Shown here: piece after piece, positions 2,115 to 26,375 of the stretch
How positions within the stretch are numbered: the stretch's first letter is position 1
How the letters are laid out: every line of letters begins with the position of its first letter
NCBI RefSeq assembly: GCF_004010195.1
Contig: NC_057726.1
Location: forward strand, 61,793,835 to 61,832,238
From: Chiloscyllium plagiosum
Taxonomy: Eukaryota
Direction of reading: 5' to 3'
DNA: 38,404 bases
Notes under the pieces: model-generated
Told to the model about the DNA's origin: nothing
Seen by the model: only the letters and a program-made list of their open reading frames with translations
Database searches by the model: none
Program-made: the position numbers and the translations under genes

Positions 2115-4170
2115 TTTTGCTTTATTCATGGGATATGGGCATCACTGACTAAGTTTGTATTCGTTATCCATCACAAATCACAGTTGTGGTGGGCTGACTC
2201 TTGATTGCTTCAGTACTCCCTGCTATCGTTCAGAGGCAGTTCAAGGATTTTGATCCAGGAAGAAGTGAGAGATCTGTGATGCAGGATAGTGTACATCTTG
2301 GAGAGAACTTGAAGATGGTCTGAGCATCTGCTGTCCTTGTTCTAAAAGATGGTAGAGGTCATGGGATTGGAAGGTGCTGTTGGAGGTACAACTTTCAGAT
2401 AATATGCATTGTTGCCCTTGTATGTCGAGTGTGGAGGAATTGATGGTGGAAGGTGATGGATTGGATGCCAGTCACGTAGTGTGCTTTACCTTGAATGGTG
2501 TTGAGCTTCTTGGTTGCGTTCAGAAACATAGTAAGTTAGAAATTAGGTGCAGGAGTACGTCATTCAGCTCTTCGAGCTTGCACCATCTTTCAATATGATC
2601 ATAACTGATTGCAATTTCAGTATCCCATTCCAACCTTTTTCTATACCCCTTGGTCCATTTAGCTGAAAGGGCCATTTCCTTCTTTAATATATCAAATGAA
2701 GAGGCCTCAACAACTTTGTACGGTAAAAATTTGCACAGGTTGACAACTATGAGTCAATAAATTCTTCCTTATCTCAGTCCTGAATTGCTTACCCCTTATT
2801 TTTAGAATTTGATCCCCTAATTCTGTACTTGGCCACCATAAGGAACGTTCTTCCTGTACGTAACCTGTCCGGTCCCATCAGGATGTGCCCATAATGAAGG
2901 AAATGGAGTATATTCCATGACTCTCCTGTCTTATGCCTTGTAGATGGTGGAAAGGTATTGGTATGCCAGGTATGTTATTCACTGAAAAACCCCTTGCCTT
3001 TGAACTTTTCATGCAATGCCAGTATCTATTTAATATGCCCAATTCAGTTTCAGGTCAACTGCAAACCCTAAATGTTGACATTGGGGCTTTCAATGATGGC
3101 AATAGCAATGAATGTTGAGGAATAATGATTCATTCTCTAATGTTTGAGCTTGAATGGCACTTTTGTGGCACGAATGTCATTTGTCAAACATCAGTCCGAG
3201 CCTAATACCATCCAGGTATTTTAAGAAAAACAGAAAAAAGAAAAACAGAAATTATTGGAAAAGCTCAGCAGGTTCGTCAGCATCTGTGAAGAGAAATCAG
3301 AGTTAAAGTTTCGGATCTGGTTATCCATTATCAGAACTTATTCTTTTGCATTTTTTTACCATGCAGATCTTGCTGCATATGGAAATGTGCCATTTGATTT
3401 TTGAATTCGGTTGAACATTGCGCAATCACCGGCAAACATGCTAATTTATGACTATTTGATGACAAAGTAATTGAAGCAATTGACGGTGGCTGATTAAGAC
3501 ATTACAACACTGATCGACCTTCCTGCTGGTTATGACTCCAATTCCTGGTGTCTTTTCCCTCTGAATACGATTGATTCTAATTTTGCAAGTGCTCCATAAA
3601 GCCAAATTTAGTCAAAAGTTAACTTAGTGTAAAGGGCAGTCACTCCCACCTCATCTCTGAAGTTCATGCCTTTTTTTTTCATGTTTGAAACCAAATCTCA
3701 AATCAGATTAGAACTTGAATTTCCTTAGTCGGGCCCAAACTGAGCACCAGCGAGCAGCGTAATTTTAAGCAAGTTTCTTACTAAAACGCTACCCCCATTC
3801 AAAGGGCTGTCTTGGATATGTTTTGATTTTTGAGGACATGGTGCATGTTGGCAAATTGACACATTTCAGGCCATATGCCAATGATGTAGCTGCACTGGAA
3901 CAGATTGGCTGGGACAAATCTAGTCTGGTCAAAAGTTTTCATTTTACTCATGGTTATCAGGGCAAATAACCTGTGCTGTATCCAGTGCCTTCATTTGTTT
4001 GTTGATGCCACATGGATGGAATAATATTAGTTGAAGATTGGAATCTGTGATTCCGCAGATTTAAAAATGAGTTAGTGGTGTACCTTGCCCTCTTTTGATT
4101 GAAAATAGATTCAGATACGTCAGCTTTATGTTTTATACTAATGTTCTGGGTTACCCCTTTGTTGATAATA
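2115..4170 (-). mobile_element. Degraded non-LTR LINE, same family as 21765-30965, with nested CR1 and Penelope remnants
   Basis: Reverse-complement similarity to the RT and 3' part of the 21765-30965 element. A CR1 3' end is inserted at about 2520-2890 and a Penelope terminal remnant at about 3235-3340. Boundaries are approximate. Confidence 0.6.
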
Positions 4171-4283
4171 GGGCTGGCATAACATTTTCAATTTCCTCCT
4201 GAAAACTCATGCCTCACCCCCACGAAATTGCCAATATTGAAATAGTTCTTCCATAAACCAGACAGAAAGCGCCCTGCTCCCTT

Positions 4284-4606
4284 GTGGTGGTCGTGGCTCA
4301 GTGGTTAGCCCTGCTGCCTCATAATACCAGGAACCTTGGTTCGATTCCAGCCTCAGGTGACTGCCAATGTGTAGTTTGCACATTTTCCCTGTGTCTGCAT
4401 GGGTTTCCTCCTACTGTCCAAAGATGTGCGGATTAGGTGAATTAGCCATGCTATATTGCCTGTTCATGGATGTGTAGGTTATGTGCATTAATCACGGGTA
4501 AATGGAGAGTAAGAGGTGAGTGGAATGGGTCTGCGTGTGTAACTTTTCGGAGGGCAGTGTGGATATTTTGGGCTGAAGGACCTGTTTGCACACTGTAGAG
4601 ATTCTA
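4284..4606 (+). mobile_element. tRNA-derived V-SINE (HE1-like)
   Basis: A box TGGCTCAGTGG and B box GGTTCGATTCC, followed by V-domain-like TTTGCACATT..CCCTGTGTCTGCATGGGTTTCCTCC and a CR1-like tail ending CCTGTTTGCACACTGTAG. Confidence 0.85.
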
Positions 4607-4903
4607 GACTGGTGACCAATATGCTGTGTGAGACTCACGTAAGAGAAGATACAAAAGTCTAGAATAAGTATGTGAAGAGTGAGTCCTAAACTGTAGGTTG
4701 GAGAGCTGTATTTGAGAATCTCCTACGTGCCCACAACACTGAAGGTGAATATTAACATTTCATCTTCCCTTGCCATCATGCATATGAATTGCTTGCAATG
4801 TTCCAGATTAGTGGTACACAGTTAGCTACAACAAATGAAACAGCGATAAATATGAATTCTATGATATGTGATTGGATATCCTCGACTTCTATCCATAAAT
4901 AAT

Positions 4904-5071
4904 TCATAACTTCAGACTGCTTTTCTGGAATTTCAGGTTTTCTCGTTCTTTATCAGCTTTAAATTTGTACATATCGTGTATTTTTCTTCCTATGTTAGGT
5001 TTGATTTTTTTTTGGAACTGGTTAACTTCAAGTTGCCAAACCAGCTTGTCATCTCTACTGCTTTGATCAGT
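4904..5071 (-). CDS. IgSF receptor putative exon 6 (terminal cytoplasmic exon, TDQSSRDDKLVW...SSLKL*)
   Basis: Acceptor ttacttccatag lies immediately before 5071. The phase-0 frame is open for 55 codons to TGA at 4906-4904, matching the phase-0 end of exon 5. The sequence is non-repetitive between repeats. The link across a 6.6 kb intron is inferred. Confidence 0.55.
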   Translation of the reverse strand, partial: TDQSSRDDKLVWQLEVNQFQKKIKPNIGRKIHDMYKFKADKERENLKFQKSSLKL

Positions 5072-5133
5072 CTATGGAAGTAATGTTTAAAATCACCTGT
5101 TAGTCTATTGTCACTCCCTCCTTGAGATAATCA

Positions 5134-5355
5134 AGATTTGGAGATGCCAGTGTTCGACTGGGGTGTACAAAGTTAAAAATCACACAACACCAGGTTATAG
5201 TCCAACAGGTTTAATTGGAAGCACACTAGCTTTCGGAGCGACGCTCCTTCATTAGGTGATAGTCTATCACCTGATGAAGGAGCGTCGCTCCGAAAGCTAG
5301 TGTGCTTCCAATTAAACCTGTTGGACGATAACCTAGTGTTGTGTGTTTTTTAACT
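5134..5355. mobile_element. Palindromic Penelope-type terminal-repeat insertion (second family)
   Basis: 92 bp arms at 5171-5262 and 5264-5355 around a single T (4 mismatches). Direct repeat TGAGATAATC at 5123-5132 and 5355-5364. Confidence 0.88.
5271..5299 (+). ncRNA. Minimal hammerhead ribozyme core (Penelope type)
   Basis: cac-CTGATGA-AGGAGC-GTC-GCTCC-GAA-AGCT-A-gtg: 5 bp stem II, palindromic AGCU, CUA triplet, 3 bp stem I (cac/gtg). Confidence 0.72.
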
Positions 5356-5572
5356 GAGATAATCTAGGTTGTAAGTAGAGGCTGTGATGAAATTTCTTCT
5401 TATTAGTTCTTAATTTGGCAATGTTTTCTAAAGTAGTGATCTCTCCCACCCAGAAGGATAAGAGCAATGGATGCCTTGTGATTTCACCATATCTATACTG
5501 ACTTGAAATTATATTACTGTCTCTTCACTGTTGTTATTAACATAATCAAACCCCTTTCCTAATAGCATTATC

Positions 5573-5903
5573 TTAGAATCATAGAATCCCTACTGTGTGG
5601 AAACAGGCCATTCAGCCCAACAAGCCCACCTCAGTTCTCTGAAGGGCATCCCACCCAGAGTCACATCCTTACCCTATCTCCATAAGTCTGCAGTGTCCGT
5701 GGCTAATTCACCTAACTGGCACATCCCTGGACACCATGGTCAATTTAGAATGGCCAATCCACCTAACTTTCACATCTTTGGACTGGTGGAGGAAACCGGA
5801 GCAAATCCAGACTCCACACTCGCAGTTGCCCAAGGTTGGAATTAATCCGGGGTCCCTGGCAATGTGAGGCAGTAGAATTAACCCATGAGCCACCATGCCG
5901 CCC
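5573..5903 (-). mobile_element. tRNA-derived V-SINE (HE1-like)
   Basis: Reverse complement begins GGGCGGCATGGTGGCTCATGGG and has the same body and tail as 4284-4606. Confidence 0.85.
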
Positions 5904-6099
5904 AACATGCACCAAACCACATGGACTGCAGATGTTCAAGAAGGCAACTCAACATCACTATCACCATCTGAAGATCTGTTAGGATTAGCAAGAAGTGTTG
6001 GCCTAGTCAATGATACCCACATGCCGCGAGAATATATGGAAAAAAAACTTTAAATTATCGCAATTTACAGTTACTAACGGCAACATGCATTCTATCGAG

Positions 6100-9000
6100 T
6101 CTAAAGGCTTTCCTTGGGGCAATTTAGTCAGTTCAGTCCCACTTCCTAATTTAAACACTGTAACCTTGTAGTTTTATTTTCAAGCGTCAATACAATTTCG
6201 TTTTGAAATCATTAATGGTCTCTGATTTCACCACCCTAGAGAGTTGCGTGTTTCAGGTCAATATCACTCACGTTAATCAGTGCTTCCTTGCAATTCTCCT
6301 GCATCTCTGTGCCAAAACGTTAAATCTGTGTCCCCTTGTCTTTGTGCTGATAATTAATGGGAACACATTTTCCTTGTCTATCCTACCTAAACCTATCAAA
6401 ATTTTGATTGTCCCTACTATGCCATATCCTCAATGTACTTTTGTCAAGGTCAACACACCCAGTATTCCAAACGTATCACAGATCTACATTTCCAATCTGA
6501 AGAACAATCCTCTTATATTTGATGTGAATTCACTCAAGAGCCCACTTTTGATAAATTGTGATGACCACAACTGCATTCAGTACTCAAACTGCGACCCAAC
6601 CAAATCTATTAAGCTTCAACATTATTCCCTTACTTTCGTACTCAGTGCCTCAAATGCTGAATTCAAGAAAACATAAGGTTTGACAACTATAGTCTTACTT
6701 GTTACCACATTCAAAGATGAATTCAGGAGCACCTTCAGCGCCCCACTGTTGTTGTACTCTCTTTAGAAAGGTGCCAATCAGATTATGTTGTTTCTCCTTA
6801 CCCATACTTGAAAATTCATCATCTCCACTTTGCTAAATTACACATGCTATTCATTAGTCCATATCCTGTTATAATCCATTAATATCATCTTCTGTTTGCT
6901 GCTGCAACTTTGGCTTCATCATCAAATTCTCAAATTTGATTCTGTCGTCCAATATCTAAGTTGTTTGCATATAACAACAAAAACGTACGTTATTGACTGA
7001 TTTATTTCACTGGTTTTGTTCCTCTCCGTGTTTCGATCTTCTCTCTCTTGATGTTATGTTGGTGTTCTGGTTAAATCTTGATATTAAAGGTGTTTGTTTG
7101 CTATTATAACCTATTTAGAGAAGCAGGCTAATGCTTAAATGAAAATAGCACACAGAGGAATGTCATATAGCTTGATAAATTTATTATTTGTAGCTGGTCT
7201 GTACTGCTTGCAGAATCTTTCATTCTCGGTGGAATATATCTTTGTTGAGAGTTTAAATGTGTAGCACTACTTTTCACAATCTCTCTTATTGAGAGAACTT
7301 CCCCATTCAACTTAGACAGTCCTGACTTTGCATTTTTGCAATTGTCTTTTAGTTAAGTTTCCGACGCAGGTTTTAGATCTAAGATTCTTATTTTCAAATC
7401 AAATGTGAAAATCTTTACAGTATGATCACTTTTCCTGGTTGTTCATTTATTGCAACATCATCAAACTTTTCTCATTCAATGTTATATGTACTAATCTGTT
7501 TCACAAAGTATTGTTCTTAGAAATTGTCATGAATATATCCCATGAACTGCTTCTGATGCCAAATAGCCCCTCATTCTTTGCAACTTCAGAGAAGGGAAAT
7601 TAAATTTATTCAGCCTCTCATCAATGGACACCCAGCTCATCTCAGGGACAATTTACTGAAGGCTCACCATGCAGTCTCCAATATAAATACATCCTACCTT
7701 AAACCAAAAGCAAAGAAATGTAGAGACTGGAAAGCTGAAACAAAAACAGAAATTGCTGGAGAAAGTCATTAGGTCTAGTAACATCTGTGGAGAGGAAGCA
7801 CAGTGAGCATTTCGAATCCAGTGACCCTTCATCAGAAATGTTTCATCAGAAATTTCTGTTTTTGTTTCGCCCTTCTTTAAACTATTAATGCAAACTGCAC
7901 ACAATTTCCAGACGTTGCCTCACCAAAGTGTGGCACAACTGCAGCAAGATTTCCTTATTCCTTTTGCTCCAAGCCTCTCAGAATAAAATTCACAGTGTCA
8001 TTAACCTTCTCAATAACTTGCTGTACCTGCATGCCGACTTTCTGTGTTGCTTGCATAAGTACATCCACGCGTCTGTGAGCATCAGCATTTACAGCTGCCA
8101 AACTAATGTGTCCATTTCAATTAAGAGTAAAATCACCCACAATTATTGCAGCACTTTTATTGTCCGATTCATGGCATTTCTTGACTCCTATAAAATTACC
8201 TGCTGATCGATGGACTATAAACTACTTCTATTTATAACTTCTTCTCCTTGCTATCTTTTATCTCCATCCACACAACTTTTGCATATTTATTTTCTCATGA
8301 AAAGTAATTTCTCATGACTGTACTGATTAATCATTTATTAACAGAGCCAACGCATCTCGTTTTCCTTTAATGCTATCCTGTTGTAATGTCACACACTCTA
8401 TAACATTCAATATGCAGTCTTGGTTACCTTGCAAACATGTCCCTACATTGCCAATCATATCATAGCTCTTTTTTTTTGGATTCATGTGATCATTTCATCA
8501 AGTTCGTTACGCATTGCCTTCATTTAATTGAGGAGCCCTTAATCTAACTATCTATATTTTCGTATTGCTTTGCATATCAGAAAATGGAAATATGCATTCT
8601 CTGTCCCTTTATCAAAATCATTTGAATAGATTTGAAGTACCTCAGACCCTTGCATGCAGAAATATCAGCCTTCCAACTTCAACCGTTTCAGTTTGTACAC
8701 ACTGTTTGCTTCCTATCTATTAAACAATCCTCTATCAATGTTCATTTCATATCCTGATCTCCTTCAGTTCTTGGCTGTCATTTGACTTTTTCGCATGCCA
8801 TTTAGAAATGCCTCCACACTGTATTTGCGATTTCCCTGTCTTTAACTTTGCAACAGAAAGCCTTCAGACGCTCCAACATATTTGTCAAACATGGTATCTC
8901 TTTTGTCAAACTGTGTTGACTTACTCTAAACATACTACAAACGTCTAACTGCATTGTTTATACTTTTATAATATATTTCAGAATTTTGATAAAAAACGTG

Positions 9001-10800
9001 GTTGATCTAACTGCTCTGCAGTTCCCTGTTTCTTTCTCCTTGAATGTGAGATTGCATTTTCCAGCTCCCAATCTGATGTGAATGTTTTTTGCAAATAAGA
9101 AATTTTGTTTGAACATACCCAGGATAGATTTCTTCATCCATTGCGAAAAATTCTGTCACCTCTGCTTCCGAGGCACCAACATTTACTTTCGCAAGTTCCG
9201 TTCTTCTATATACTTTTAAAAACTCTTACAATCTATTTTTATATTAATAGCTAATTTACTTTTATTTGTTCCCATTTTATCAACTTTTTGATGCTTCTTT
9301 GTTAATTATTGAATCTCCCTTACTTCTCAGTCTCGTTTCCGATCTTTGCAAAACATAAGCCTCTTTTTAAAGTCTTAAACCACATTTAACTTTCTGAGTG
9401 AGCCATGGATGATGTTTCTTGCTGAGTTTTTATTAATCAATTAATTGAATATTTTCTTGAAATTATGTCTTTAAAGCCTACCCACTGTATATTCAATTAT
9501 CAGTATAATACTAATTAAATTAAATAATCACCTATTTTCCCCTCATAGTAATGTATTGATTTTGTTCAAGTTTGCGATTCTTTTCTGTGATTGTAACCAT
9601 AAAACCTACTACGGACTTCAATGGATTTATGATCATTTTTCCCCAGCAGACATTACAATGTTATTGCTACCTAATAATTCATCATTAGAAACACTGAATT
9701 TGCGATCACCTCCTTCAGAGGCAGTTGTAAAATGTATTGCTGCATGAAACTACCACAAAAATAAATTCTACAAGCTACTGTTCCAGATTATCGTTAGCAA
9801 TTCGATTTACATTGTTTACGTAAAGATTAAATTAACTTCATGATAAATACGTTTCCTTTGTGACAAGCTCCAAAAGTTTAGCTCAGTGCTTGATCCGCAG
9901 CATACTTTCTGTTATGGGCCCTACAAACTGCTCCCGCTATCACTCTCTGACTCCTGATATTTCCATTTACTGGGGAGAGTGATTCTGTTTCATGATATTC
10001 TTTCTTACTTCGTTGCATTATCCCTTATGATCAGAAACACCCTCCTCTTTTATAATTCTGAGCTCCTTTTAAAATGTATGTACCATGGAATGTTTATTTC
10101 TCAACCTTCATCACCTTGAAGCCATATCTCAATAGTAGTGTTCAAAGCAAAACTATGTACTACAGCTATATTTGTGTAAACAACACGTATTTCCTTGAAG
10201 ATGCATCATACGTTTAGAAAAGAGACTTTAATTTCACAGCTTTACTTCTTATTCCTACATTGAATTTATTCACATATATAGAATTAATTCTAAACTCGCA
10301 GTCCCATACTGCTTATTCTTTCTTTAACCCACATATCTGCATTGTTCTCATGTTTCGATGTCTTATTCTACCTCTCTGGATGGCTACATCTTGCTTCACT
10401 ACATTCCTCTCATCAGTATTCCTGACTACAGCTCTCATTACATCTTTATCCCACTATAGATGGTCCCACTAGCTTAAGTATTGTGCACCGAAATGAAATA
10501 GTTCCTTGCTTCCCAAATAATCAACATCCCTTGTAGCAATGCATCATTTGAGCTATGCGTTGAAGTCTCTAATCTGCTGTATCCTATGCCAGTAGTCACA
10601 TGGCTCAGATAACAATTCCAGAGATTATAATTTGATACTTGCTCCATTTTTAATTTAGTCCTAAAAATCTATCAGCATAACAAGATTCTTTGTTACACGT
10701 GTCATTGGTTCCCATGACACATAGATTCTCCTCTCTCATTCAAGGTTCCTTTTCAGTTATGAAGTGATGATGTCCTCAACTTTGGAACCAGGCAGACAGC
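6100..10800 (-). mobile_element. Patchwork of old CR1-like LINE fragments, with a Penelope terminal remnant at about 7705-7870
   Basis: Degenerate similarity to the CR1 at 24445-29553, for example QQRYIPPRMKDS in ORF 7128-7310. Many stops and frameshifts; boundaries approximate. Confidence 0.55.
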
Positions 10801-11641
10801 ACAGCATTTGGAGCTCAAAGAGTCAGCTGTTAACGGGGAGAATAATTTCCCCGTCTGTGCAATACAAGTGCTTCAAATTAGCAACTTGGCACCTGGAAAT
10901 CTCTCTCTTCTTTTAAAGAAGTTGAAGTATGAAGGCTCAGAATCAGCAGTCTCCCCTCCTTTATGTGCCCGAAGGCATGTTCCAAGTTAATTACCAAAGC
11001 ACAGCAAAATGCTGTTATTATTTCTTAAACAATGGGCCGGGCAAGGAAGTTGGTTCTGAGTTTACCCCCATTCAGAATACATACGCAGGTAAAATGCAAC
11101 AGCCAGTAAAGAGTGCAGAGGTGATTTAGTTTGGTATCTGGGATGAAGGACTTCAGTCATTCTGGGTAGATTAGACAATTCGACTGTTTTCCGCAGAATA
11201 GTGATGGACAAGGGACGATTTCTTAATGTTGCTCAGAATTATGAGAGGTTTCAATAAAATAAGTCAGTAAAATATGTTTACAGTTGTGGATCTGTCAGTA
11301 ACCAGAAGACACATTTATAATTGCTAATCGAATAGCCCTGGGAAGATAAATATTTATTGTATTCAAATCTCTGCTGTAGTTTAAAATACACTTCCCGAAT
11401 ATCTGACAGAACAGACCCAATGGAAGTTTTAAAAATGAGGTCGAGATTTCCCCATAGCTGCAGAAATACAAGTCTAACGACAAAGAGTGAGGAACTGGGC
11501 TGGTGAATAGTTGTTTTCAAAGAGCGAGACGTTCATAAAGGCCCCCTTCAGTCTATAAATGAATAAATCTTCTCAGACGATTGCAATAGTTCTTGCTATT
11601 TCTTCTGACTGTTTTTCCGTGTAAAAAGACTGTCATCTTAC

Positions 11642-11677
11642 CGGCTGTTGAGCTTCATCCACTACCGCAGCATGTCT
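11642..11677 (-). CDS. IgSF receptor exon 5 (cytoplasmic mini-exon RHAAVVDEAQQP)
   Basis: Acceptor ttcctttgggtgttcag and donor CCG|GTAAGA. The exon is 36 nt, phase 0-0, compatible with exon 4. Confidence 0.65.
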
Positions 11678-11759
11678 CTGAACACCCAAAGGAATTAAAA
11701 GATCTTTAAATTGAATTTAAATAAAAAAAACACAAATATAATAATAAATATATAAATAT

Positions 11760-12240
11760 GCTGGAGCTTATTCAGAGGAAATTCACTCGATTGACAACTG
11801 GAATGTGCGTGGTCTTATGGGAATCAGTTGGATGGACAAGGCTTCTTTCCATTGGGGTTTGGCTTGATTGCAGTGTATCAAATCCTGAATCATTTTTGAC
11901 AAGGTGGACATAGGATGAATGTTATCACCTGGGTAAATCGAGAGCCGTGGGAAATAGTTTACCAATTAAAAGTTGTCCTTTCTGGACAGAGATGTTGAAG
12001 CTTGTCATTTGTCTTAGAAGATTGTACCAGTTTGGAACTCACTGCTCCAGAATATGGTGGTGGTGGTGTGATTGAATATTTAAAGGCAAATGTACCGAGA
12101 TTCTTGTCTGACAAGGGAAGTGAAATGTTACTGGGGGATAGTTGGGAATGTGGAATTCCAAGCACCAGCTGATCACCTTATTCAAAGTTGGAGCGGCTGG
12201 AAGGTCAACTTGTGCTTTTGATTCATATGCTTGCTTGTGT
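11760..12240 (+). mobile_element. Degraded CR1 LINE 3' end
   Basis: Similar to the 3' part of the CR1 fragment at 28020-28950. A second, weaker copy lies at about 11090-11560. Confidence 0.55.
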
Positions 12241-12713
12241 GAATAATTTACTAAGTGCTCAAGCCACACCAGTGGCCTGCATTACCAAGAGTTACAGCTC
12301 AATAAGGAGTATGTTATCTTTGTAAATCCGATTTTGGTGCTACTCACAACAGAGTAGACTTTTGTTTGCATTGCGAAATTTTTTCGGCGATACAATCTGA
12401 GAGAATGGAAAAGCAGTTTGGATATTTTGATATCACTTCAAAATGAATATAATTACACTTCTAACTTTAGAATCGGGAGGTCATGTATAAATCGAGTAAA
12501 CAATTCGAAAGAGGGGATGAAATAATCCAATTTATATTGTCATGTCATTTTGCTAATCACATTTGTGATATTAGCTTCATTCGTTAACCATGTAGGAAAG
12601 TGCTCACTTTTCCTCTATAGCTAATCACGATTCGCCTCCTTTTTACGTCTTCGATAAAGGATCATTGGGTCTTGGGAACTAAAAATATTCAGTAAAATAA
12701 CAAATGTTCTTAC

Positions 12714-12835
12714 CCGCTTTAACACGAATGTTGTCAAAATGATTATCAATAGTAGAATTGCCAGCATGCCACCTGCCCATCTGGAGATCAGCAGATAATC
12801 TTTACCTACATGATCAATATTATTTGAATAAAAAA
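12714..12835 (-). CDS. IgSF receptor exon 4 (stalk and transmembrane: VFYSNNIDHVGKDYLLISRWAGGMLAILLLIIILTTFVLKR)
   Basis: Acceptor gtgctgtgcag (phase 1), a hydrophobic run ending in KR stop-transfer residues, and donor CGG|GTAAGA (phase 0). An alternative in-frame acceptor would start the exon at 12805. Confidence 0.82.
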
Positions 12836-14005
12836 CTGCACAGCACAGTAAGATTTAAACACTGAGCATCATGGTCAGGCACAGGAGGGCGAGCTGCAAA
12901 GGAGTGTCCCTGGACGATCACGTCCAATGAATGTAAATAGCGACTGATCCCCTTTATTTCAATGTGTGATGTGTGTACAAAGATTATAATGTCTATCATA
13001 TGACAAATCAGTAATACAATTTATAGAGGGAACAGTTCCATAAAGATTCGGGAATTTTCAAACTGGGTTGTTTCTAAAGGGGAAAGACATTTTATTGAAC
13101 TCGCCAATTTACGTAGCACCTGCTGCAAAACTGCCAAATTCTTACTTTCGTCAGATTTAATGCAGATCACCTCCTGTAACATTTGGCTTTTGCCCCGCCG
13201 ACATCCTTGCAGGACCATTGCAGCTTGATTTCCTTAACAAGGTACGCAACCTAGCCAAGGCTTTCTGTTCAGTCACAGTGCTAATGTTCATGCAACAATG
13301 TGAAAAATGACCTACACCCTGTCCACAATAAGCAATTCAAAGGAAATATGGGTAATGTACATCCCATTCTGGTTTCTGCAAAGATATGGAAGGTGCCATG
13401 GACAGTGCTGTCAGGTGAAACTTTCACAAGAATAACTTGTTCACTGAGGTTCGATTTGAATTCCACTCGGTGTTGTGTTTTTTGTTCAGTTGTGGAATGT
13501 GAACGTACCTAGCTGTCCAGTGTTTATTGTCCAAGCCTCGATACCCTTCGAAAGGTGATGGAGACCTACCCTCTAGAACTGCTGCAGTCCATTTAATATA
13601 GGGCGACCCACAATGTTGTTAGAGGGGGAATTCCAGGATTTTTACTCAGTGACTGTGAAGGAACTTCTGATTGCACTATAGTACTAGTTCAATTATTGAT
13701 CAAAGAGATGAAGTCTAGATGTGAGGTGAATGTGTCTGCTCTTAAAATTAAGGCAACATTTGACCAAGTATGGCATTAAGGAGTCCTAGAGAAACCAATG
13801 TCAATGGGAATAGAGTGGGATGGGGAATGGGAGCGCTGGCAGTGATGGAAGTGGTTAGAACTTACTACTGGTTGGAATTATATCGAGGAGAGAGGAAAAT
13901 GTTTTGGATATCAATTATTTCTGTACTATGCATCAACAGAGCAGTATCCTGCCCCAACTATTTTGCCTGCTTCTTCCTGACCTTGCCTCCAACATAAAGT
14001 CGACA

Positions 14006-14592
14006 TTCAGGAGGATGGAAGAACATAGCAAGCCAGGCAGCATCAGGAGATGGTGAAGTCAACGTTTTGGGTGTAACTCTTATTCAACACTGCGGGATTG
14101 TTGTAGTGGGAGCTGCAGATAAAGGGACTCACTGAGTGCACATCTGAGAGAGGCAGATAACTTCTTCAAAGTGGACATCCTTTCAGAAAGCTTCGTAGTT
14201 GAACAAACTTGGTTAGAGACAAAAAAAAACTGCAGATGCTGGAATCCAAAATAGACAGGCTGGAAGAACACAGCAAAGTCTCCTCAAAGGATGTCCACAT
14301 TGAAGAAGTTCTCTGCCTTCTCAGACGTGCACTCAGCATGTCCCTTTTTCAGCAGCTACTCCGACACTCACCCCCAGGTCCTGCAAGGAGGTCGGTGGGG
14401 CAAAAGCCTTTCTCAGTAGCAATCACAGTATACACCTGAAACAACTGAGAATTGCACAGTCTTCAACTATGTTTGATGTGAAGCACCCTCTCTGCTCCAG
14501 CATGGTGAAGATGAAGCAGTTGCTGGCCACAAATTGGCACCTTAGGTTACACCCAAAACGTTGACTTCTCCAGCTCCTGATGCTGCCTGGTT
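14006..14592. mobile_element. Rearranged Penelope-like terminal-repeat insertion
   Basis: Direct repeat TCCAACATAAAGTC(G/A)ACA at 13988-14005 and 14593-14610. Inverted pairs at about 14033-14078 / 14545-14590 and about 14105-14185 / 14275-14362. Confidence 0.75.
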
Positions 14593-15574
14593 TCCAACAT
14601 AAAGTCAACAATCTTCAGTACCATTTGCAGCTCCTCAGAAAATGAAATAGTTCTTGACCAAGTGCAGGAAAACCAAGGCACAATTCCATCTCCAGCTGAT
14701 AAGTGAAGAGTAACATGCACACCACACAAATGACCATTTCCAGCCAGATAGAATCTAACTGTCTCCCTTAATATTCACTGGCATCCCATTGCTATACTTC
14801 CCATATTCGACATGCTGAGGGTTGCATTGATCAGAAACTGAACTGGGCCAGTCATATACTTAACCAAAACAGAGGCTAGGAATTCTGCATCCTCTTAATT
14901 TCCTCGAAGTGTATCTATTGTCTGCAAGGCAGAATTGATGAATTTGATGGGATACTCATCACTTGCCAGAATGAATATATATTAACGACACTCAAGAAAT
15001 TAGATGTCACCTGGGACAAAGAAGCCCATTTGATTTGAATCCAATTCACCACGTCAAATATTCACCCCCGGACCACACATTGACATTGCAGCAGTGTATA
15101 CCATTGACTCTGGCCACTGGTTGCTGGTGTCCCCACTTTGTGCCATAGGTTCCTGGCATCATCTCTCCGGCTGCTGCTCACAAGTGTTCCAGCATACTTC
15201 ACCATTCAACTATATCATGGTTGAACTTCCTCAGCACTATTTTCTCGCACTATCTATATATCATTTAACATCTGGAACAATCTTGATCTCAATATTTTAT
15301 ATTCTTAGTGACCGAGCTTTCCCAGCAGTGTAAGGAGGCGGGGCTGGGTGGCTGATGGGAGTTGGCGGAATTCCAACATTCTGGTTGAAGAATTTCTCTT
15401 CACCTCAGTCCTAAATGACCTGCCCCTCCATATTGTGAAATAGTGTTCTCTGGATCTCGACCATGCGCCAGGGAAAATGTCCTTTCCTCATTTACCCTCG
15501 CGAGACCTGTAAGGATTTGTATGTTTTATGACACCCTTCTCCAGCCTTCCCAGACAGCACCGATTGCAATTTTT

Positions 15575-15800
15575 AGTGTATATAACAAGAGCAACTTGCA
15601 ATTATACTGACTTTAACCGGACAAAAAATAATTCTCAGGCATTTCGCAGAGCATTACCAGCCAAACATAATTGATCTTAGGACAGAGAGAAATAAGGATA
15701 AAGGAACTTCTTAAAGAAGGAACGGCACAGTGGGAGACTGAGAGGCCGCAATTTTCCAAGTTTAGAGGATAGGCAACTGAAGACGTTGTTGGTGGAGATT
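15575..15800 (-). mobile_element. Probable L2-like LINE 3' remnant
   Basis: AACTTGCAATTATACTGACTTTAAC...GGCATTTCGCAGAGC resembles the reverse-complemented L2-type 3' terminus. Highly degenerate. Confidence 0.35.
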
Positions 15801-16133
15801 AGCTGGATAGGATAAACGATATACATGAACGGGTTGTATCTGCACATTCATTTCATTAAACAAAATATAATTGCCGAGTTCTGAACGTTTGAGTAGTTTT
15901 CGCAACAATTTCCCATTTCAGGTTATTTTGGGAATCTATTCACCTTCCTGCACCCGCAAGCTATCTCCCAATATTTTACTTTGTTTCCATTTTGTGGCAT
16001 TGAGAATGAATACCGGTCACATTTATGTGATACGCTCGTTTTAGCGTTAGTTCAATGCCTTAAAGATACAGATTTAAGTCCATCACCACCCATCACACCC
16101 CCAACTCCCTGATGGGAATATTTTCAATCTTAC

Positions 16134-16430
16134 CTCGATTAACAGTGTAGCTGACACTGGCGAGCTCTTCAAGACAGATATGAGATGCCTGGCAGGTATA
16201 AACTGCACCGCTCTGCACAGGCTGCGCTTGTTCCAACGAACTAGTAACCTCATAGAGCCCGTCCAAAGTCTTGTTTTTCACAGTTTGTATTCGGGCCTGA
16301 ATTTCGACGCCATCTCTTAGCCAGGAGATTCTTAAATCCTCCGGGTAAAAGGTTGTAGTTTTACATTCGAACTTCCAATAATTCCTGGAAATCCCTTCCA
16401 CGGCAACGATTTTCCGGAGTGTTGGGGAAA
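16134..16430 (-). CDS. IgSF receptor exon 3 (C1-set Ig domain)
   Basis: Acceptor tttactttctgttatag and donor CGAG|GTAAGA; 297 nt, phase 1-1. FECKTTTFYPEDLRISWLRDG, DGLYEVTSSL and YTCQASH fit the C1/Ig-MHC signature [FY]xCx[VA]xH. Confidence 0.95.
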
Positions 16431-18207
16431 CTATAACAGAAAGTAAAACATTTTTTGAAAGATCAGCTTACATTCTCTTTTGTTCCCCTTCCCTCCAGAA
16501 CGCACCTTTCCTCGCCCCATGTTTTGCTGTTCCGTTCCGAGTGCGACAATTGTTTTCATTGTTATCCTATTTTAAACTTGCTTTATGCATTTATTTTTAG
16601 AAATGCAGGGCAAAACTTTGGTATGCTTTTCAATTTGTTTACAACGCGGTTGAACACGGGTAGAAAATCTTTTATAAAACGCAGGCCTTACATAATCCCA
16701 AAGGATTACCCTTCTGTAAATGAATTCGATTTGTTCAACATGTTTATTTCTCCCCCTGAAGGAGATTATGGGGGTGAAGCAAACTGTTCCAATGGGTAGG
16801 TCATTGGACCCTTTGAGTCTGATCCAACAGTTGATAAGATCATGTCTGTGCCGTTTGAGTTTCTGATTCATATGCCCGTCTTCACCTGAATCTCCCCGAA
16901 AATATCAATTCTACATTAACCGTTTACTAAAGCGAAAACGTGCTCTCTCGATCTGCAATCAGTGCTTAGCTGGAAGTAATGTCACTGAGTTTGTATTGTC
17001 CTGCTGTTCATTACAATCAATATCCGTACCATCTGATCCCTGTCTATTTATGGTTCCTGCATTTTAATACCTTAAATGAGTAATTAAATGAGATATTTTA
17101 CTCACTTCCAAATTCATGCTAGCTTTTATTGCGAGCAAAGGCTGAGAATTCTGACATTTTCCCCAGGGATATGCTTCAAACAGCATAGAATCCCGTGGAG
17201 AAAGTAAATAGTATTATTTTGATCTCCTGTCGTAAGTCCTTTTGCAACGAAATAATAAGTTATAAACACAAGGAGCGCAAAGTGTTTTTTAAAATATATG
17301 TTTGTTTCAGTCCTTAATGCACTTCGTGCCTGCATCAAAGAAAGTCCAGTTGGCGAGATACAGATGACCAAACAAAGGCAACGGTTAACTTCCCTGTCCT
17401 GCAAACTTAAGAACTGGGGATCAATCAGTTGATCTCTCACTATATCACATGATTCGCTTGTTTAAAAAAATGGCGTTTCAAGCATGTTAGTATTGGAAAA
17501 ATGTGCAGCCAAACGCGAGGCAATTCTGACCTTGAATTTCTCTCATTAATAGAATCATAGAATCCCAGCAGTGTGGAAGCAGGCCATTCTGCCCATCGGG
17601 TCCACACCACCACAACTCACTCTGCTGCTCACTTAAGTTATGGTTGAATTTTATCTCAATTCCGTTTGTCCAATTTTATTTAATTGCGTTGATTCCCAGC
17701 ATTAATTTCCCTCGATATCCATCTCAGAGTCTGATCAATTCGGTACAGTTCGAAAAGTTATACGATTTGAATTAATACTGAATGTACATTGCGGGTGCCG
17801 ATTTCGTGGTCTTTAGAAACTTGTATAAAGAAATTGTGTAGGAGTTGTCAAAATTATTCTGATGAAAGATTATGACTTTAAACATTAATTATGCTTTGAT
17901 TAACAAGTAAGTCCAAGGGTATCAGGTGGAGAGGAAAGCGAGTTGAGACTACAATCAGACCAGCCAAAATTTTATTGAGTGACTGAGTGAGCTGGAGGGA
18001 CAAATGGCCTACTCTAGCTTCTAATCCTTATGCTTGTATAACCTCTGCAGATGCTCTGACACGCTTCAAATAACTTTTATTAATATTTCACGTTTCCAAT
18101 ACCCACAGTAATTTGTTTTTGCAATAACATTATTTCCATTGTTGTATTTTAGCACTATAGTTAGAGATAAACCGAGCATCTTAACTCGTGACACAAGAAC
18201 AGAACCG

Positions 18208-18330
18208 TCCTGAAGAAGGATCATTGGACACAACGTTAGCTCACACAGATGCTGCCAGACCTGCGGCGTTTTTCCGGCAATTTCTATTTTTGTTTCAGAT
18301 TTCCAGCATCCGCAGTTCTTCGTTCTATCT
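18208..18330 (+). mobile_element. Penelope-like terminal repeat remnant
   Basis: CTGAAGAAGGATCA...CAGATGCTGCCAGACCTG...TTTGTTTCAGATTTCCAGCATC, the reverse complement of the family at 3235-3340 and 7705-7840. Confidence 0.7.
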
Positions 18331-18672
18331 TATTCCATGAATTAATTTCGACCCAAGATTTAATTAGTCATCCTGTTTCACTATCTTGGAGCAATGTCAA
18401 CTATTTTTGCAACAGAAAGGCACTCGTTGGATTTACAGCACTGTGCTGTGTCATGATCATGACGGGCGATGGAATTGATCGTGAGAAGTGCCGTTTAACG
18501 GGCGAAAGCGAATCAACAACCGTTGTACAGCGGGGTCAATGGAAAAGAGATGCCCCGGACAGTGCGAAGAGAATACGCTGTTACTGGATTCTCCTCTTAT
18601 TACAAAGCCTCAGATCACATAAATTGCACAAAACAACTGAAGATTGCCTGCCCCTGGTAAAGTGTCACTTAC

Positions 18673-18978
18673 CACACACAGTCAGCAACGAGCCACTTCC
18701 AGCTCCAATGATGGTTTGCTGATGCCTTAGTTTGCAAAAATACATTCCGGAGTCTGCGACAGTGACATTGAGAACATGAAGTGAGCTCCGTCCTTTCTCG
18801 ACATGCATTCGCTTTCTGCTGTCCGGTTCTAGAAGCGATTCCTCATTGCGTCTCCACCAAAATATTTCAGGAATGTCTTGAAATATGGGAAATGTGCAGA
18901 ACATGGAAACATTGTCACCTCTGGCCGCTTTCAACTGTTTGGGAAACTGATCTACTTTGCTCGAAGTTACTTTAGTTA
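18673..18978 (-). CDS. IgSF receptor exon 2 (V-set domain with J-like G strand)
   Basis: Acceptor tttctgttcttttttaaaatag and donor TGTG|GTAAGT; 306 nt, phase 1-1. Motifs GDNVSMFC, IFWWR, SSLHVLNVTVADSGMYFC and GAGSGSLLTV. Confidence 0.96.
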
Positions 18979-19203
18979 CTATTTTAAAAAAGAACAGAAA
19001 CCGTGACACTAGTTGTAGAAGCAGAGAAGGTAAAACAACAGAGTAAAGTACAAGAACAGCTAAGAATAATCACGTACATCGAATTGCGGAAGCAAAATAT
19101 CTAACTTTGCAGTGCATAGTAGCTGTAAACATGAAATGCAATCAAAGTTATTCTAAAAGGACAGCTCATAATATTTAAGGGTCACAAGAGTGCCAAGGCA
19201 TAC

Positions 19204-19243
19204 CCAGAAGAGCCATGAACAGAACCGCTGCTCTCGCCGACAT
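19204..19243 (-). CDS. IgSF receptor exon 1 (signal peptide MSARAAVLFMALL)
   Basis: ATG with A at -3, a hydrophobic core, and donor G|GTATGC in phase 1. It joins exon 2 in frame to give ...ALLVTKVTS-SKVDQFP. Confidence 0.88.
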
Positions 19244-19299
19244 ATTGCTGATATGGAAACAGAGTTGGCTCCTTGCTGTAAATGAGGATAGTATTTTGA

Positions 19300-19760
19300 A
19301 TGGTTGGGGGTTGGAGGAAGGGGAAGTGGGTGTCAAAGATAAGAATATTAAACGTGAGAGCATGCCATGAGATATCACTTGACTACTGCAGCGCACTGGA
19401 TGTAATTGTACTTCTCTGTGGGAATTTGTTAGGTTGGAGGTCCCTTCCAAACCCCCTGCTGAAACATTTCCATCTGATGATCAACGGTTTTGTTTTATTT
19501 TCAGTCACCACGGAGACACTACCTTCCAAAAACCCCCTTTGTCAGCGTTTACCTTTTATCGTTAGCTTAATGCTGAAAGTATCGCTTCAGGCCACAATAC
19601 TCGGCTCTTTTATTTAAGCCATTCCTTTCCACGTAAGTAACTGTTTATCCTCGGAGCTCTGAGTTTCCCGCCATCCTCATCTTTAACAAGCTCCGAACAC
19701 CCGAGTGTCCAGGAGGAAACACTGGAATGATAATTATATTCATTTCCATTTCTCCATTTC
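19300..19760 (-). promoter_or_regulatory. Putative promoter of the IgSF gene
   Basis: Repeat-free sequence upstream of the ATG. It has ETS/PU-box-like GAGGAAGGGGAAGTG (19314-19328) and GAGGAA (19713-19718), kB-like GGGAAACTCA (minus, 19660-19669) and ISRE core GAAATGGAAA (minus, 19743-19752). Motif matches only. Confidence 0.45.
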
Positions 19761-23698: not shown

Positions 23699-24000
23699 TT
23701 AGATTAGATTAGATTACATTACAGTGTGGAAACAGGCCCTTCGGCCCAACAAGTCCACACCGACCCGCAGAAGCGCAACCCATCCATACCCCTATATTTA
23801 CCCCTTACCTAACACTACGGGCAATTTAGTATGGCCAATTCACCTGACCTGCACATCTTTGGACTGTGGAAGGAAACCAGAGCACCCAGAGGAAACCCAC
23901 GCAGACACGGGGAGAACATGCAAACTCCACACAGTCAGTCGCCTGAGGCGGGAATTGAACCCGGGTCTCTGGCGCTGTGAGGCAGCAGTGCTAACCACTA
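23699..24000 (-). mobile_element. tRNA-derived V-SINE (HE1-like), well preserved copy
   Basis: The minus strand has GTGGTTAGCACTGCTGCCTCACAGCGCC, B box GGTTCAATTCC, the V domain, and an (AATCT)n tail. Confidence 0.9.
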
Positions 24001-26091: not shown

Positions 26092-26375
26092 ATGAGATTA
26101 CCTACAGTGTGGAAACTGGCCCTTCGGCCCAACACGTTCACACCAACTCTTCGAAGAGCAACCCACCCAGACTCATTTTCCTCTGGCAAATGCACCTAAC
26201 ACTTTGGGTAATTTAGTATGGCCAATTCACCTGACCTACACATCTTTCGACTATGGGAGGAAATCAACGCAGACTTGAGGGAGAATGTGCAAACGCCGCA
26301 CAGACATAGGCTGGAATCGAACCTGGGACCCTGGCGCTGTGAGGCAGCAGTGCTAACCACTGAGCCACCGTGACC
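26092..26375 (-). mobile_element. tRNA-derived V-SINE (HE1-like) nested in CR1
   Basis: CACGGTGGCTCAGTGGTTAGCACTGCTGCC...GGTTCGATTCC on the minus strand. Confidence 0.87.

What the first reader, a model, noticed from the sequence alone, without database searches (positions are those of the whole stretch)
4904..19243. Non-rearranging VJ-C1 receptor shaped like an antigen-receptor chain
Seen: a six-exon gene, intact in the reading frame modelled here, with leader, V, C1, TM and tail. A single exon encodes the whole V domain including a J-like G strand (YFC-KLRHQQTII-GAGSGSLLTV, compare FGxGTxLxV), and I see no RSS in or beside it. Established: C1 domains are largely confined to Ig, TCR, MHC, b2m, tapasin, SIRP and a few B7-family proteins such as B7-H6. 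Germline VJ plus one C1 is the architecture proposed for the pre-RAG antigen-receptor ancestor, and has been described for PRARP and amphibian VJC1-type genes. Inference: this is a chondrichthyan member of such a lineage, or of an uncharacterised SIRP/NKp30-related family, that automated annotation would label only as '-like'.
Basis: partly seen in the sequence, partly recalled or inferred. Interest (0 to 1): 0.85.

Follow-up and report, generated by a model that had tools for sequence, protein, structure and literature searches.

The report
Shark SIRP-like receptor, inhibitory tail lost
This is a real shark gene for a cell-surface receptor built from one antibody-like variable domain and one constant domain; it is one ordinary member of a large family that resembles mammalian SIRP receptors, and this copy seems to have lost its inhibitory signalling tail.

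Summary
The leader, V, C1 and TM exons are real, on the minus strand at 19243-12714. The V exon is one exon, ends in a J-like strand and has no RSS beside it. The "intact six-exon" tail could not be confirmed.

The gene belongs to a multigene family found across cartilaginous fish: V(J-like)-C1-TM plus tyrosine-motif tails. RefSeq names its members inconsistently as SIRP-alpha-like, NCR3LG1-like, tapasin-related-like or Ig-lambda-like. Its nearest relative is a Chiloscyllium plagiosum protein, 79% identical in V and 72% in C1, which keeps its tail tyrosine motifs.

In the window the family-type tail is decayed. The best relic has lost both tyrosines and carries an in-frame stop, and the outer edge of the TM has gained an Arg. 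My reading is a non-inhibitory (activating or decoy) partner of inhibitory paralogues, or else a dying copy.

RNA reads gave a blank. Orthology to SIRP, PRARP or UrIg could not be settled, and no outgroup tree or synteny analysis was possible.

First-stage notes of this scan describe at least eight similar genes elsewhere in this genome.

The parts
19186..19243 (-). Leader exon. ATG at 19243-19241. Two possible phase-1 donors: after 19204 (g|gtatgc) or after 19186 (t|gtgacc).
   Evidence: Sequence. tblastn of P0151 residues 1-21 matches 19243-19181 (57% identity, E 0.009). That match favours the longer exon, which reads MSARAAVLFMALLGMPWHS.. like the family's MS.RA..QYMALLGMVWPAA.
18673..18978 (-). 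Single exon for the whole V domain, including a J-like G strand (..YFCKLRHQQTIIGAGSGSLLTVC). Phase 1 to 1, 306 nt. Two further in-frame AG acceptors lie at 18971-18970 and 18956-18955.
   Evidence: Pfam V-set E 2e-10, I-set 1.7e-9. 79% identity to P0155. AF2 pLDDT 91.1 with the G strand split at 88-92 / 96-100. Foldseek finds VNAR, TCR V-alpha and SIRP-alpha V, TMq 0.73-0.82. No RSS.
16134..16430 (-). C1-set constant-domain exon, phase 1 to 1, 297 nt.
   Evidence: Pfam C1-set E 1.6e-10. 72% identity to P0155. AF2 pLDDT 86.5. Foldseek top hits are MHC class II beta-2 domains, TMq 0.87-0.89. PDB sequence hits include UrIg2, Ig CH, SIRP-gamma/alpha, TAPBPR and B7-H6.
12714..12805 (-). Transmembrane exon (G)KDYLLISRWAGGMLAILLLIIILTTFVLKR. 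Arg at the outer edge of the hydrophobic core. The donor cgg|gtaaga is in phase 0. An alternative in-frame acceptor gives a start at 12799.
   Evidence: Sequence; hydrophobicity scan. Aligns to family TM exons: 19/27 with P0035, 16/20 with P0153. Family members have ..GCAGG.. where the window has ..SRWAGG...
4933..5124 (-). Relic of the family's terminal cytoplasmic exon: ..SWFGNLKLTSSKKKSNLT*EEKYTICTNLKLIKNEKT*. Phe and Cys stand where relatives have the two tail tyrosines. There is an in-frame TAG, and the final stop is in the same register as the family stop.
   Evidence: tblastn. Smith-Waterman score 43 against a shuffle mean of 30.8, SD 3.2, max 41. Ungapped register gives 7/27 identities with P0155; intact members share 9-26 of 27. 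No AATAAA/ATTAAA between 5215 and 3034.
12185..12247 (-). Possible further relic of a tail exon (IIHTSKHMNQKHKLTFQPLQL against the family's ..IYSQ.K....KLTYAALQL). Not significant on its own.
   Evidence: tblastn E 2.1. Local score 33, inside the shuffle range. A similar weak match lies at 9743-9666 (score 40).

Best explanation
The locus is a non-rearranging immunoglobulin-superfamily receptor gene. It belongs to a multigene family found across cartilaginous fish, whose members have a split leader, one V exon that already contains a J-like G strand, one C1-set exon, a TM exon and, in most members, a cytoplasmic tail with ITIM/ITSM-type tyrosine motifs. The nearest described kind is the SIRP family of paired receptors.

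Shown: the four 5' exons, the family, and the position of this copy as sister to a Chiloscyllium plagiosum gene that still carries tail tyrosine motifs.

Inferred: this copy has lost the inhibitory tail and has gained an Arg (and lost a Cys) at the outer edge of its TM. It would therefore work as the non-inhibitory partner of its inhibitory paralogues. It would bind the same or a similar unknown ligand through the V domain, and either signal through an acidic-TM adaptor or act as a decoy. The V domain is germline encoded, and nothing in the locus supports somatic rearrangement.
For: Exons and domains.

Family:
- 14 of the 150 listed hits of the V-exon search are short V-C1 proteins at 33-68% identity.
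- 17 of 17 hits and 33 of 34 profile hits are chondrichthyan.
- The window pairs with P0155 in both the V tree and the C1 tree (100/99 and 99/97).

Constraint on the ectodomain:
- The window keeps all 7 invariant V columns and all 8 invariant C1 columns.
- Its V end branch (0.084) is shorter than its sister's (0.14).
- The V, C1 and TM exons (306 + 297 + 92 nt) are open, with GT/AG sites.

Tail and TM:
- P0155 keeps LTYATL and TLYAGI, while the window's relic has F and C there plus a TAG.
The third frame was not checked for this motif.
- The family has GC at the outer TM edge; the window has RW.
- The only other type I member with Arg there, P0157, also has a 27-residue tail without tyrosine motifs. 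That is 1 of 18 type I models.

SIRP as the nearest kind: source names, the atlas at 0.96, SIRP-alpha/gamma among the PDB hits and SIRP-alpha V among the fold hits.
Against: - No RNA support. Zero reads fell on the C1 or TM exons in two single-cell poly-A runs. Only about 2% and 6% of those runs were read, and the tissue is unknown.
- The real 3' end of the transcript is unknown.
- The tail relic is only marginally above chance (43 against a shuffle maximum of 41).
- Intact tail exons could lie beyond the window's start.
- The Arg sits at the boundary of the hydrophobic core, not inside it, and no adaptor was examined.
- The ectodomain is about as similar to Ig light chains and UrIg2 as to SIRP. 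Profile bits: light chains 73-77; SIRP-alpha 85.5 over two stretches; UrIg2 101.5 over three stretches.
- SIRP has two C1 domains; this gene has one.
- The window's C1 end branch (0.25) is longer than its sister's (0.16).
Confidence: 0.55

Rival explanations
1. A decaying copy. The gene is a young pseudogene of the family. Its 3' half has already broken down, and its V, C1 and TM exons have simply not yet acquired disabling changes.
For: - The tail relic has an in-frame stop and has lost both tyrosines.
- The phase of the TM exon donor differs from the family's.
- There is no canonical poly-A signal for about 1.9 kb after the terminal relic.
- No RNA reads were found.
- The window alone has lost two residues that are invariant in 12 relatives: F76 to M and G166 to R, read by eye against A1.
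- The C1 end branch is longer than the sister's.
Against: - 695 nt of V+C1+TM remain open with usable splice sites.
- All 15 columns invariant across 28 and 25 relatives are kept.
- The V end branch is shorter than the sister's.
- The start codon and leader are family-like.
- The decay is confined to the part that is dispensable for a non-inhibitory receptor.
- The RNA blank rests on 2-6% of two single-cell runs.
Confidence: 0.3
2. The family is not SIRP kin in particular. It is a separate surviving branch of the VJ-C1 'pre-RAG antigen receptor' stock (the PRARP / UrIg kind), and the SIRP-like tail is convergent or shared by descent from that stock.
For: - The architecture V(J)-one C1-TM is that of a TCR or PRARP-type chain, not the V-C1-C1 of SIRP.
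- The best PDB sequence hit of the C1 exon is UrIg2 (E 7.1e-16 summed over three domains).
- The family profile hits UrIg2 and Ig light chains as strongly as SIRP.
- The leader is split and the Ig exons are phase 1.
- Passages of PMC10751288 place VJC1-type precursors at the origin of antigen receptors.
Against: - The UrIg2 score is a sum of three weak domain matches (15-25 bits each).
- The V exon does not find UrIg2 among its 60 best PDB hits.
- UrIg and UrIg2 have three or more C domains, and no ITIM tail is mentioned ('ITIM' occurs 0 times in PMC12227049).
- No PRARP sequence could be compared.
Confidence: 0.12
3. A germline-joined immunoglobulin light chain, a TCR-like chain, or a one-to-one orthologue of tapasin-related protein or B7-H6, as some RefSeq names suggest.
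For: Some relatives are named Ig lambda-1 light chain-like, TCR beta chain-like, tapasin-related-like or NCR3LG1-like. Light chains score 73-77 bits with the family profile.
Against: - A TM exon and, in relatives, tyrosine-motif tails follow the C1.
- The J-like end is I-G-A-G-S-G-S-L-L-T-V, not FGxGT.
- No light chain is among the 60 best PDB hits of the V exon.
- There are no RSS, D or J segments.
- There is no tapasin N-terminal domain: the leader is followed directly by V.
- The names disagree with each other even within one species and one chromosome. That is what best-hit naming gives for a family without a tetrapod orthologue.
Confidence: 0.03

Closest known systems
SIRP family (SIRP-alpha / beta / gamma; PTPNS1), mammalian paired receptors
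   Same: - N-terminal V domain with a germline J-like G strand. SIRP is listed among the joined-VJ IgSF members in a passage of PMC11599192.
- C1-set constant domain.
- TM, and in relatives a tail with several ITIM/ITSM-type tyrosines.
- Inhibitory and short-tailed members coexist in one family.
- Source names and the atlas point to SIRP-alpha.
- SIRP-alpha V is among the fold hits.
   Different: - It has one C1 domain, not two.
- No one-to-one orthologue was found.
- Sequence similarity of the ectodomain is no higher than to Ig or UrIg2.
- The ligand is unknown; CD47 was not tested.
- The four-tyrosine layout of mammalian SIRP-alpha is recalled, not compared here.
UrIg and UrIg2 (elasmobranch non-rearranging antigen-receptor-like genes; PMC12227049, sections 4, 7 and 12 read)
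   Same: - The VJ domain is in one exon, with a split leader, C1-type domains and no rearrangement.
- They are restricted to cartilaginous fish.
- UrIg2 is the best PDB sequence hit of the C1 exon.
   Different: - UrIg has three C domains and is secreted. UrIg2 has 9-11 C domains and an IgM-like TM.
- The window has one C1, and its relatives have tyrosine-motif tails.
- V-level similarity was not detected.
[quoted passage not shown] 2019, seen only as a reference and in passages of PMC10751288 and PMC11599192)
   Same: Non-rearranging VJ-type V domain. By recall it has V-C-TM architecture.
   Different: It could not be compared. The paper is not held and no sequence was available, so the relationship is unknown.
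Activating members of paired Ig-like receptor families (SIRP-beta, activating KIR/LILR and similar; recalled general knowledge)
   Same: - The ectodomain is close to that of an inhibitory relative: 79% in V and 72% in C1 with P0155, which keeps its tail tyrosine motifs.
- The ITIMs are lost.
- A basic residue lies at the TM.
   Different: The Arg is at the outer boundary of the TM rather than deep in it. The actual tail and the adaptor are unknown, and expression has not been shown.

Membership tests
Chondrichthyan V(J)-C1-TM 'SIRP-alpha-like' family (RefSeq models, no paper found) | V and C1 exons that group inside the family with support | tested here: met
   The window is sister to P0155 in both the V tree (100/99) and the C1 tree (99/97), inside a clade of shark and ray members. 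Identity is 79% and 72%.
Chondrichthyan V(J)-C1-TM 'SIRP-alpha-like' family (RefSeq models, no paper found) | Family TM exon (..AGG.LAILLLIIIL..) | tested here: met
   19/27 identities with P0035 and 16/20 with P0153. The window differs at the outer edge, with SRW in place of FGC.
Chondrichthyan V(J)-C1-TM 'SIRP-alpha-like' family (RefSeq models, no paper found) | Cytoplasmic tail with ..TVY.QTK.. / ..LTYAAL.. / ..VYA.V.. motifs | tested here: not met
   Only a relic remains, without tyrosines and with a stop. Some family models also lack the tail, for example P0157 and the 8 type II models.
SIRP | N-terminal V-set domain with a germline J-like G strand | tested here: met
SIRP | Two membrane-proximal C1-set domains (V-C1-C1) | tested here: not met
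   There is one C1 exon in the window. Relatives with two C1 look like fused or duplicated models (P0155, P0175).
SIRP | ITIM tail that recruits SHP phosphatases (alpha), or a short tail plus a basic TM residue that binds an adaptor (beta) | tested here: inconclusive
   Relatives have ITIM/ITSM-type motifs. The window has none in the two frames examined, and it has a boundary Arg. Binding cannot be tested with these tools.
SIRP | Orthology or synteny with the SIRP cluster of bony vertebrates; CD47 as ligand | not testable with these tools
The window holds no flanking gene. No bony-vertebrate sequence was returned.
UrIg / UrIg2 | VJ exon followed by three or more C1-type exons | tested here: not met
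   There is one C1 exon. The definition is from PMC12227049.
UrIg / UrIg2 | Linkage to the MHC (UrIg) or to the IgH/TCR-alpha-delta complex (UrIg2) | not testable with these tools
   The window holds only this gene and repeats. Notes of the scan place paralogues, not MHC or Ig genes, nearby (unchecked).
PRARP | Sequence relationship to chicken PRARPA/B | not testable with these tools
   No sequence or paper was available.
Rearranging Ig/TCR V gene or germline-joined IgL | RSS beside V, or a C exon that ends the protein with no TM | tested here: not met
   No RSS. The J-like strand is fused in the V exon. A TM exon follows C1.

The most novel reading that the evidence does not exclude
The family, and not this copy alone, may be the closest living non-rearranging counterpart of a single antigen-receptor chain: split leader, VJ in one exon, exactly one C1, a membrane-proximal Cys and a TM. 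It would have been kept in cartilaginous fish as a large paired-receptor cluster, with tetrapod SIRPs derived from it by C1 duplication. On this reading the window shows an inhibitory member being turned into an Arg-TM activating member. It would give a living model of how a VJ-C1 receptor acquires adaptor-based signalling like a TCR or BCR.
Probability: 0.12. Interest if true: 0.8.

Novelty: new member of a known kind. Interest (0 to 1): 0.42.

Why it matters
SIRP-type VJ-C1 receptors have long been discussed as kin of the antigen-receptor ancestor. Sharks carry a large family of them that is inconsistently named and, in the library searched here, undescribed. Proper trees and synteny for this family could show whether it, UrIg/UrIg2 and PRARP are one stock.

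This particular copy adds a small but useful point: within the family, inhibitory genes seem to turn into tail-less, Arg-bearing ones, as in mammalian paired receptors. On its own the window is one ordinary member among many.

Tried and rejected
- **Second TM exon of the family's other class** (R...IIV[D/E]H). The only other hydrophobic candidate on the minus strand (about 5994) lies next to SINE-like sequence, and I recognised it from memory as common shark repeat. Only 5574-5803 was shown to be repeated inside the window. I dropped it as an exon, but this was not proven.
- **Further tail exons.** Sliding 32-residue pieces of seven relatives' tails over three frames of 2500-12720 gave scores inside the shuffle range, apart from the terminal relic.
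- **Frameshift at the tyrosine codon.** It rests on a score of 32, which is chance level, so it is kept only as a lead.
- **Rerun of the family profile at E<=10.** The method scores only the 8000 candidates that share the most words, so this says little about distant kin.
- **Outgroup trees** (SIRP, PRARP, UrIg, TCR, IgL, NKp30, CD8, tapasin, B7-H6). The trees are within-family only and rooted on the Callorhinchus rows.
- **Column entropy of the V domain** among 19 rows. It showed only mildly raised values in the BC and FG loops and the D/E strands (1.6-1.8 against 1.0-1.3), with no CDR-like hypervariability.
- **Synteny.** It was not possible.
- **Literature.** Searches for a description of shark SIRP-like genes found none (one search was badly framed). 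The PRARP searches found only citing passages. Two papers were not held. I did not ask for any supplementary file. Table S1 and figs S1-S2 of PMC12227049, and the supplements of PMC10751288, may list gene models that bear on linkage.
- **Joined protein.** The spliced, joined protein of this gene was never built or searched. Each exon was searched and folded apart.

Full report
**What is there.** The gene lies on the minus strand.
- **Leader.** An ATG at 19243-19241 opens a hydrophobic leader (MSARAAVLFMALLG..). It can be spliced in phase 1 after 19204 or after 19186. Relatives read MS.RA..QYMALLGMVWPAA before the V domain, and tblastn aligns that stretch to 19243-19181 (E 0.009), so I prefer the longer leader exon. 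Either way the leader is split by an intron of about 200 nt.
- **V exon.** It is 18978-18673, 306 nt, phase 1 to 1. It encodes a complete V-type domain that runs from the B-strand Cys through WW, DSGMYFC and IIGAGSGSLLTVC to a GT donor.
- **C1 exon.** It is 16430-16134, 297 nt, phase 1 to 1, and carries the C1 hallmarks FEC..FYP..ISW..YTC..SH.
- **Domain assignments.** Pfam gives V-set E 2e-10 (whole profile), I-set 1.7e-9 and C1-set 1.6e-10.
- **Exon models.** AlphaFold models of the two exons, each made apart with family alignments, are confident (pLDDT 91.1 and 86.5). The V model has a G strand broken at the GxG. It lacks a clear C'' strand and is nearest to shark VNAR, CD79b, TCR V-alpha and SIRP-alpha V (TMq 0.73-0.82). 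The C1 model is nearest to MHC class II beta-2 domains (TMq 0.87-0.89).
- **No RSS.** A scan of 15900-19500 on both strands found one poor match inside the V-C1 intron, against about two expected by chance, and one bare heptamer at 18439.
- **No further Ig exon.** No other V or C1 exon exists in the window. The rest of the window is repeats and LINE fragments.

**The TM exon.** It is 12805-12714, with an alternative acceptor that gives a start at 12799. It encodes (G)KDYLLISRWAGGMLAILLLIIILTTFVLKR and matches the TM of relatives (19/27 with P0035).

**The family.**
- **Representative search.** A search of the V exon alone against 1.84 billion representatives was dominated by giant multi-Ig proteins. 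It also listed 14 short proteins with 33-68% identity over the whole V exon. These have V, a PPTPL hinge, a C1 (CKTAAFYPE..YTCLVSH), a TM and tails with repeated tyrosine motifs.
- **Searches with relatives.** Searching with the closest full-length one (P0035, Heterodontus francisci) gave 17 hits, all chondrichthyan. Six sit on one H. francisci chromosome. A profile of 12 members gave 34 hits, 33 from sharks, rays or Callorhinchus and one unnamed. The list was the same at E<=10.
- **Source names.** They are inconsistent: SIRP-alpha-like (PTPNS1-like), NCR3LG1-like, tapasin-related-like, Ig lambda-like, TCR beta-like, PD-L1-like and class II DP-alpha-like. This is the pattern expected when there is no clear tetrapod orthologue.
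- **Within-family trees.** Trees of V and of C1 (29 and 26 rows, rooted on two Callorhinchus rows, no outside outgroup) show at least three old subfamilies, each with both sharks and rays. Both place the window as sister to P0155 of Chiloscyllium plagiosum (100/99 and 99/97). Identity to P0155 is 79% in V and 72% in C1.
- **Scan notes.** First-stage notes of this scan describe at least eight similar genes in the same genome. Several lie 34 kb to 8.8 Mb away on the same piece. These notes are unchecked.

**Which known family?**
- **Ectodomain sequence is not decisive.** The C1 exon's best PDB hit is UrIg2, but as a sum of three weak domain matches (15-25 bits each). Single-domain hits to IgM/IgE constant domains, SIRP-gamma/alpha, TAPBPR, class II beta and B7-H6 all lie at 32-38 bits.
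- **V exon.** Its best whole-domain PDB hits are VNAR and TCR alpha.
- **Family profile.** It scores Ig light chains at 73-77 bits, SIRP-alpha at 85.5 (two stretches) and UrIg2 at 101.5 (three stretches).
- **What points to SIRP.** The whole architecture with tyrosine-motif tails, the RefSeq names, and the language-model atlas, whose two nearest clusters for P0161 are SIRP-alpha clusters (0.96, 204-205 of 256 features). The atlas result is a lead, not a test.
- **Difference from SIRP.** The family has one C1 domain, not two.
- **UrIg and UrIg2.** They differ in having three to eleven C domains (sections 4, 7 and 12 of PMC12227049). That paper does not mention SIRP, PRARP or ITIM.
- **PRARP.** It could not be compared.

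**This copy's 3' half.**
- **Exon phase.** In relatives the TM exon appears symmetrical: P0035 and P0151 differ by exactly 34 residues. It is followed by short cytoplasmic exons. In the window the TM exon ends in phase 0.
- **Search for tail exons.** Seven relatives' tails were searched against three frames of 2500-12720. Only one match rose above 60 shuffles (43 against a maximum of 41).
- **The relic.** It lies at 5124-4933 and reads ..SWFGNLKLTSSKKKSNLT*EEKYTICTNLKLIKNEKT*. Its SKK motif and final stop are in the same register as the family's terminal exon. Phe and Cys stand where P0155 has the tyrosines of LTYATL and TLYAGI, and there is an in-frame TAG between them. It shares 7/27 identities with P0155, where intact members share 9-26 of 27.
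- **No ITIM/ITSM.** The third frame was not checked for this motif.
- **Poly-A signal.** No AATAAA or ATTAAA lies between 5215 and 3034.
- **TM edge.** Family members have ..GCAGG..; the window has ..SRWAGG.. .
- **Family precedent.** Among 27 TM-bearing family models, 18 have this type I TM and 8 have a different TM (R...IIV[D/E]H) with short tails. Only one other type I model has an Arg at the edge (P0157), and it too has a short tail without tyrosine motifs. That is two cases, so it is suggestive only.

**Constraint.**
- The window keeps all 7 invariant V columns and all 8 invariant C1 columns.
- Its V end branch is shorter than its sister's, while its C1 end branch is longer (0.25 against 0.16).
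- Read by eye against alignment A1, it alone changes 2 of the 26 residues that are invariant in 12 relatives (F to M, G to R). It shares four further changes with P0155.
- So decay is concentrated in the tail.

**Expression.**
- Two single-cell poly-A RNA runs of the same species gave 11 and 0 reads. All 11 were partial matches to a high-copy repeat at 13.9-14.3 kb.
- A third run, guessed to be RNA, covered only that repeat.
- About 2% and 6% of the runs were read, and such libraries are usually end-biased. This is a blank, not evidence of silence.
- The DNA run X1 covers 29 of the 30 bins.

**How it most likely works.**
- Shown: a germline-encoded V(J)-C1 ectodomain on a TM anchor, in a family whose typical members carry ITIM/ITSM-type tails.
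- Inferred: typical members are inhibitory receptors that recruit SH2 phosphatases. This copy has been released from that role. It acts either as an activating partner through its boundary Arg and an acidic-TM adaptor (from recall, FcR-gamma-type partners use an Arg near the outer leaflet) or as a decoy. The alternative is a copy on its way to death.
- Odds: about 0.55 for a functional non-inhibitory receptor of this family, 0.3 for a pseudogene.

**Novelty.** The gene is a new member of a known kind. The family is present in public annotation under mixed names. I found no paper on it in the held library, and the scan has met it repeatedly in this genome. The open and more interesting question is whether the family is SIRP, PRARP or its own branch of the VJ-C1 stock.

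Noticed in passing
family proteins (P0158, P0159, P0163, P0046, P0126, P0148, P0149, P0191): The family has a second TM class. An Arg comes just before the hydrophobic core, and an Asp/Glu-His pair lies at its inner end (..R.VLGFLVIL..IIVDH..), with short tails. This was seen in 8 of 27 TM-bearing models. P0046 is named as an isoform of a SIRP-alpha-like gene, so alternative TM exons in one gene are possible.
   Followed up: partly
window 16134-16430 (C1 exon): Contigs of DNA run X1 differ from the window at 5 places in the 297-nt C1 exon: 2 synonymous, plus Q>L, D>N and T>A. The 1230 nt of intron at 14900-16133 show only 3 differences. Three of the five are at partial depth. This could be an allele or a near-identical paralogue.
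   Followed up: partly
window 11954-12680: One X1 contig (depth 4.4) joins 11954 to 12680, skipping 725 nt that begin 34 nt beyond the TM exon donor. This is a possible indel polymorphism or an assembly artefact.
   Followed up: no
P0044 (Chelonia mydas, named NCAM2 isoform X3): This turtle protein has six tandem V domains, each ending in a J-like GxGT.VTI strand. Its TM (R...IIVAEC) recalls the shark type II TM. It may be a sauropsid relative of joined-VJ receptors and looks misnamed.
   Followed up: no
window 18674-18676, and family hinge: The window, P0155 and the Callorhinchus members have a Cys right after the J-like strand (..LTVC-V.P..). Most type I members also have a Cys at the outer TM edge (..GCAGG..), which the window has lost. 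These unpaired Cys residues suggest disulfide-linked dimers.
   Followed up: no
window 13900-14700; also 5574-5803, 4402-4497, 17550-17595 and 23720-23884: A very high-copy repeat lies at 13.9-14.7 kb (summed contig depth up to 75,000 in X1). SINE-like pieces are shared between several places in the window.
   Followed up: partly
window 24700-29300: These are LINE fragments on the minus strand. An endonuclease-RT domain scores E 5e-5 and a GDSL-type esterase-like piece E 3e-4, both below Pfam's cut-offs. The GC-rich stretch at 22-23 kb holds the two N runs and Gly/Pro-rich low-complexity ORFs.
   Followed up: partly
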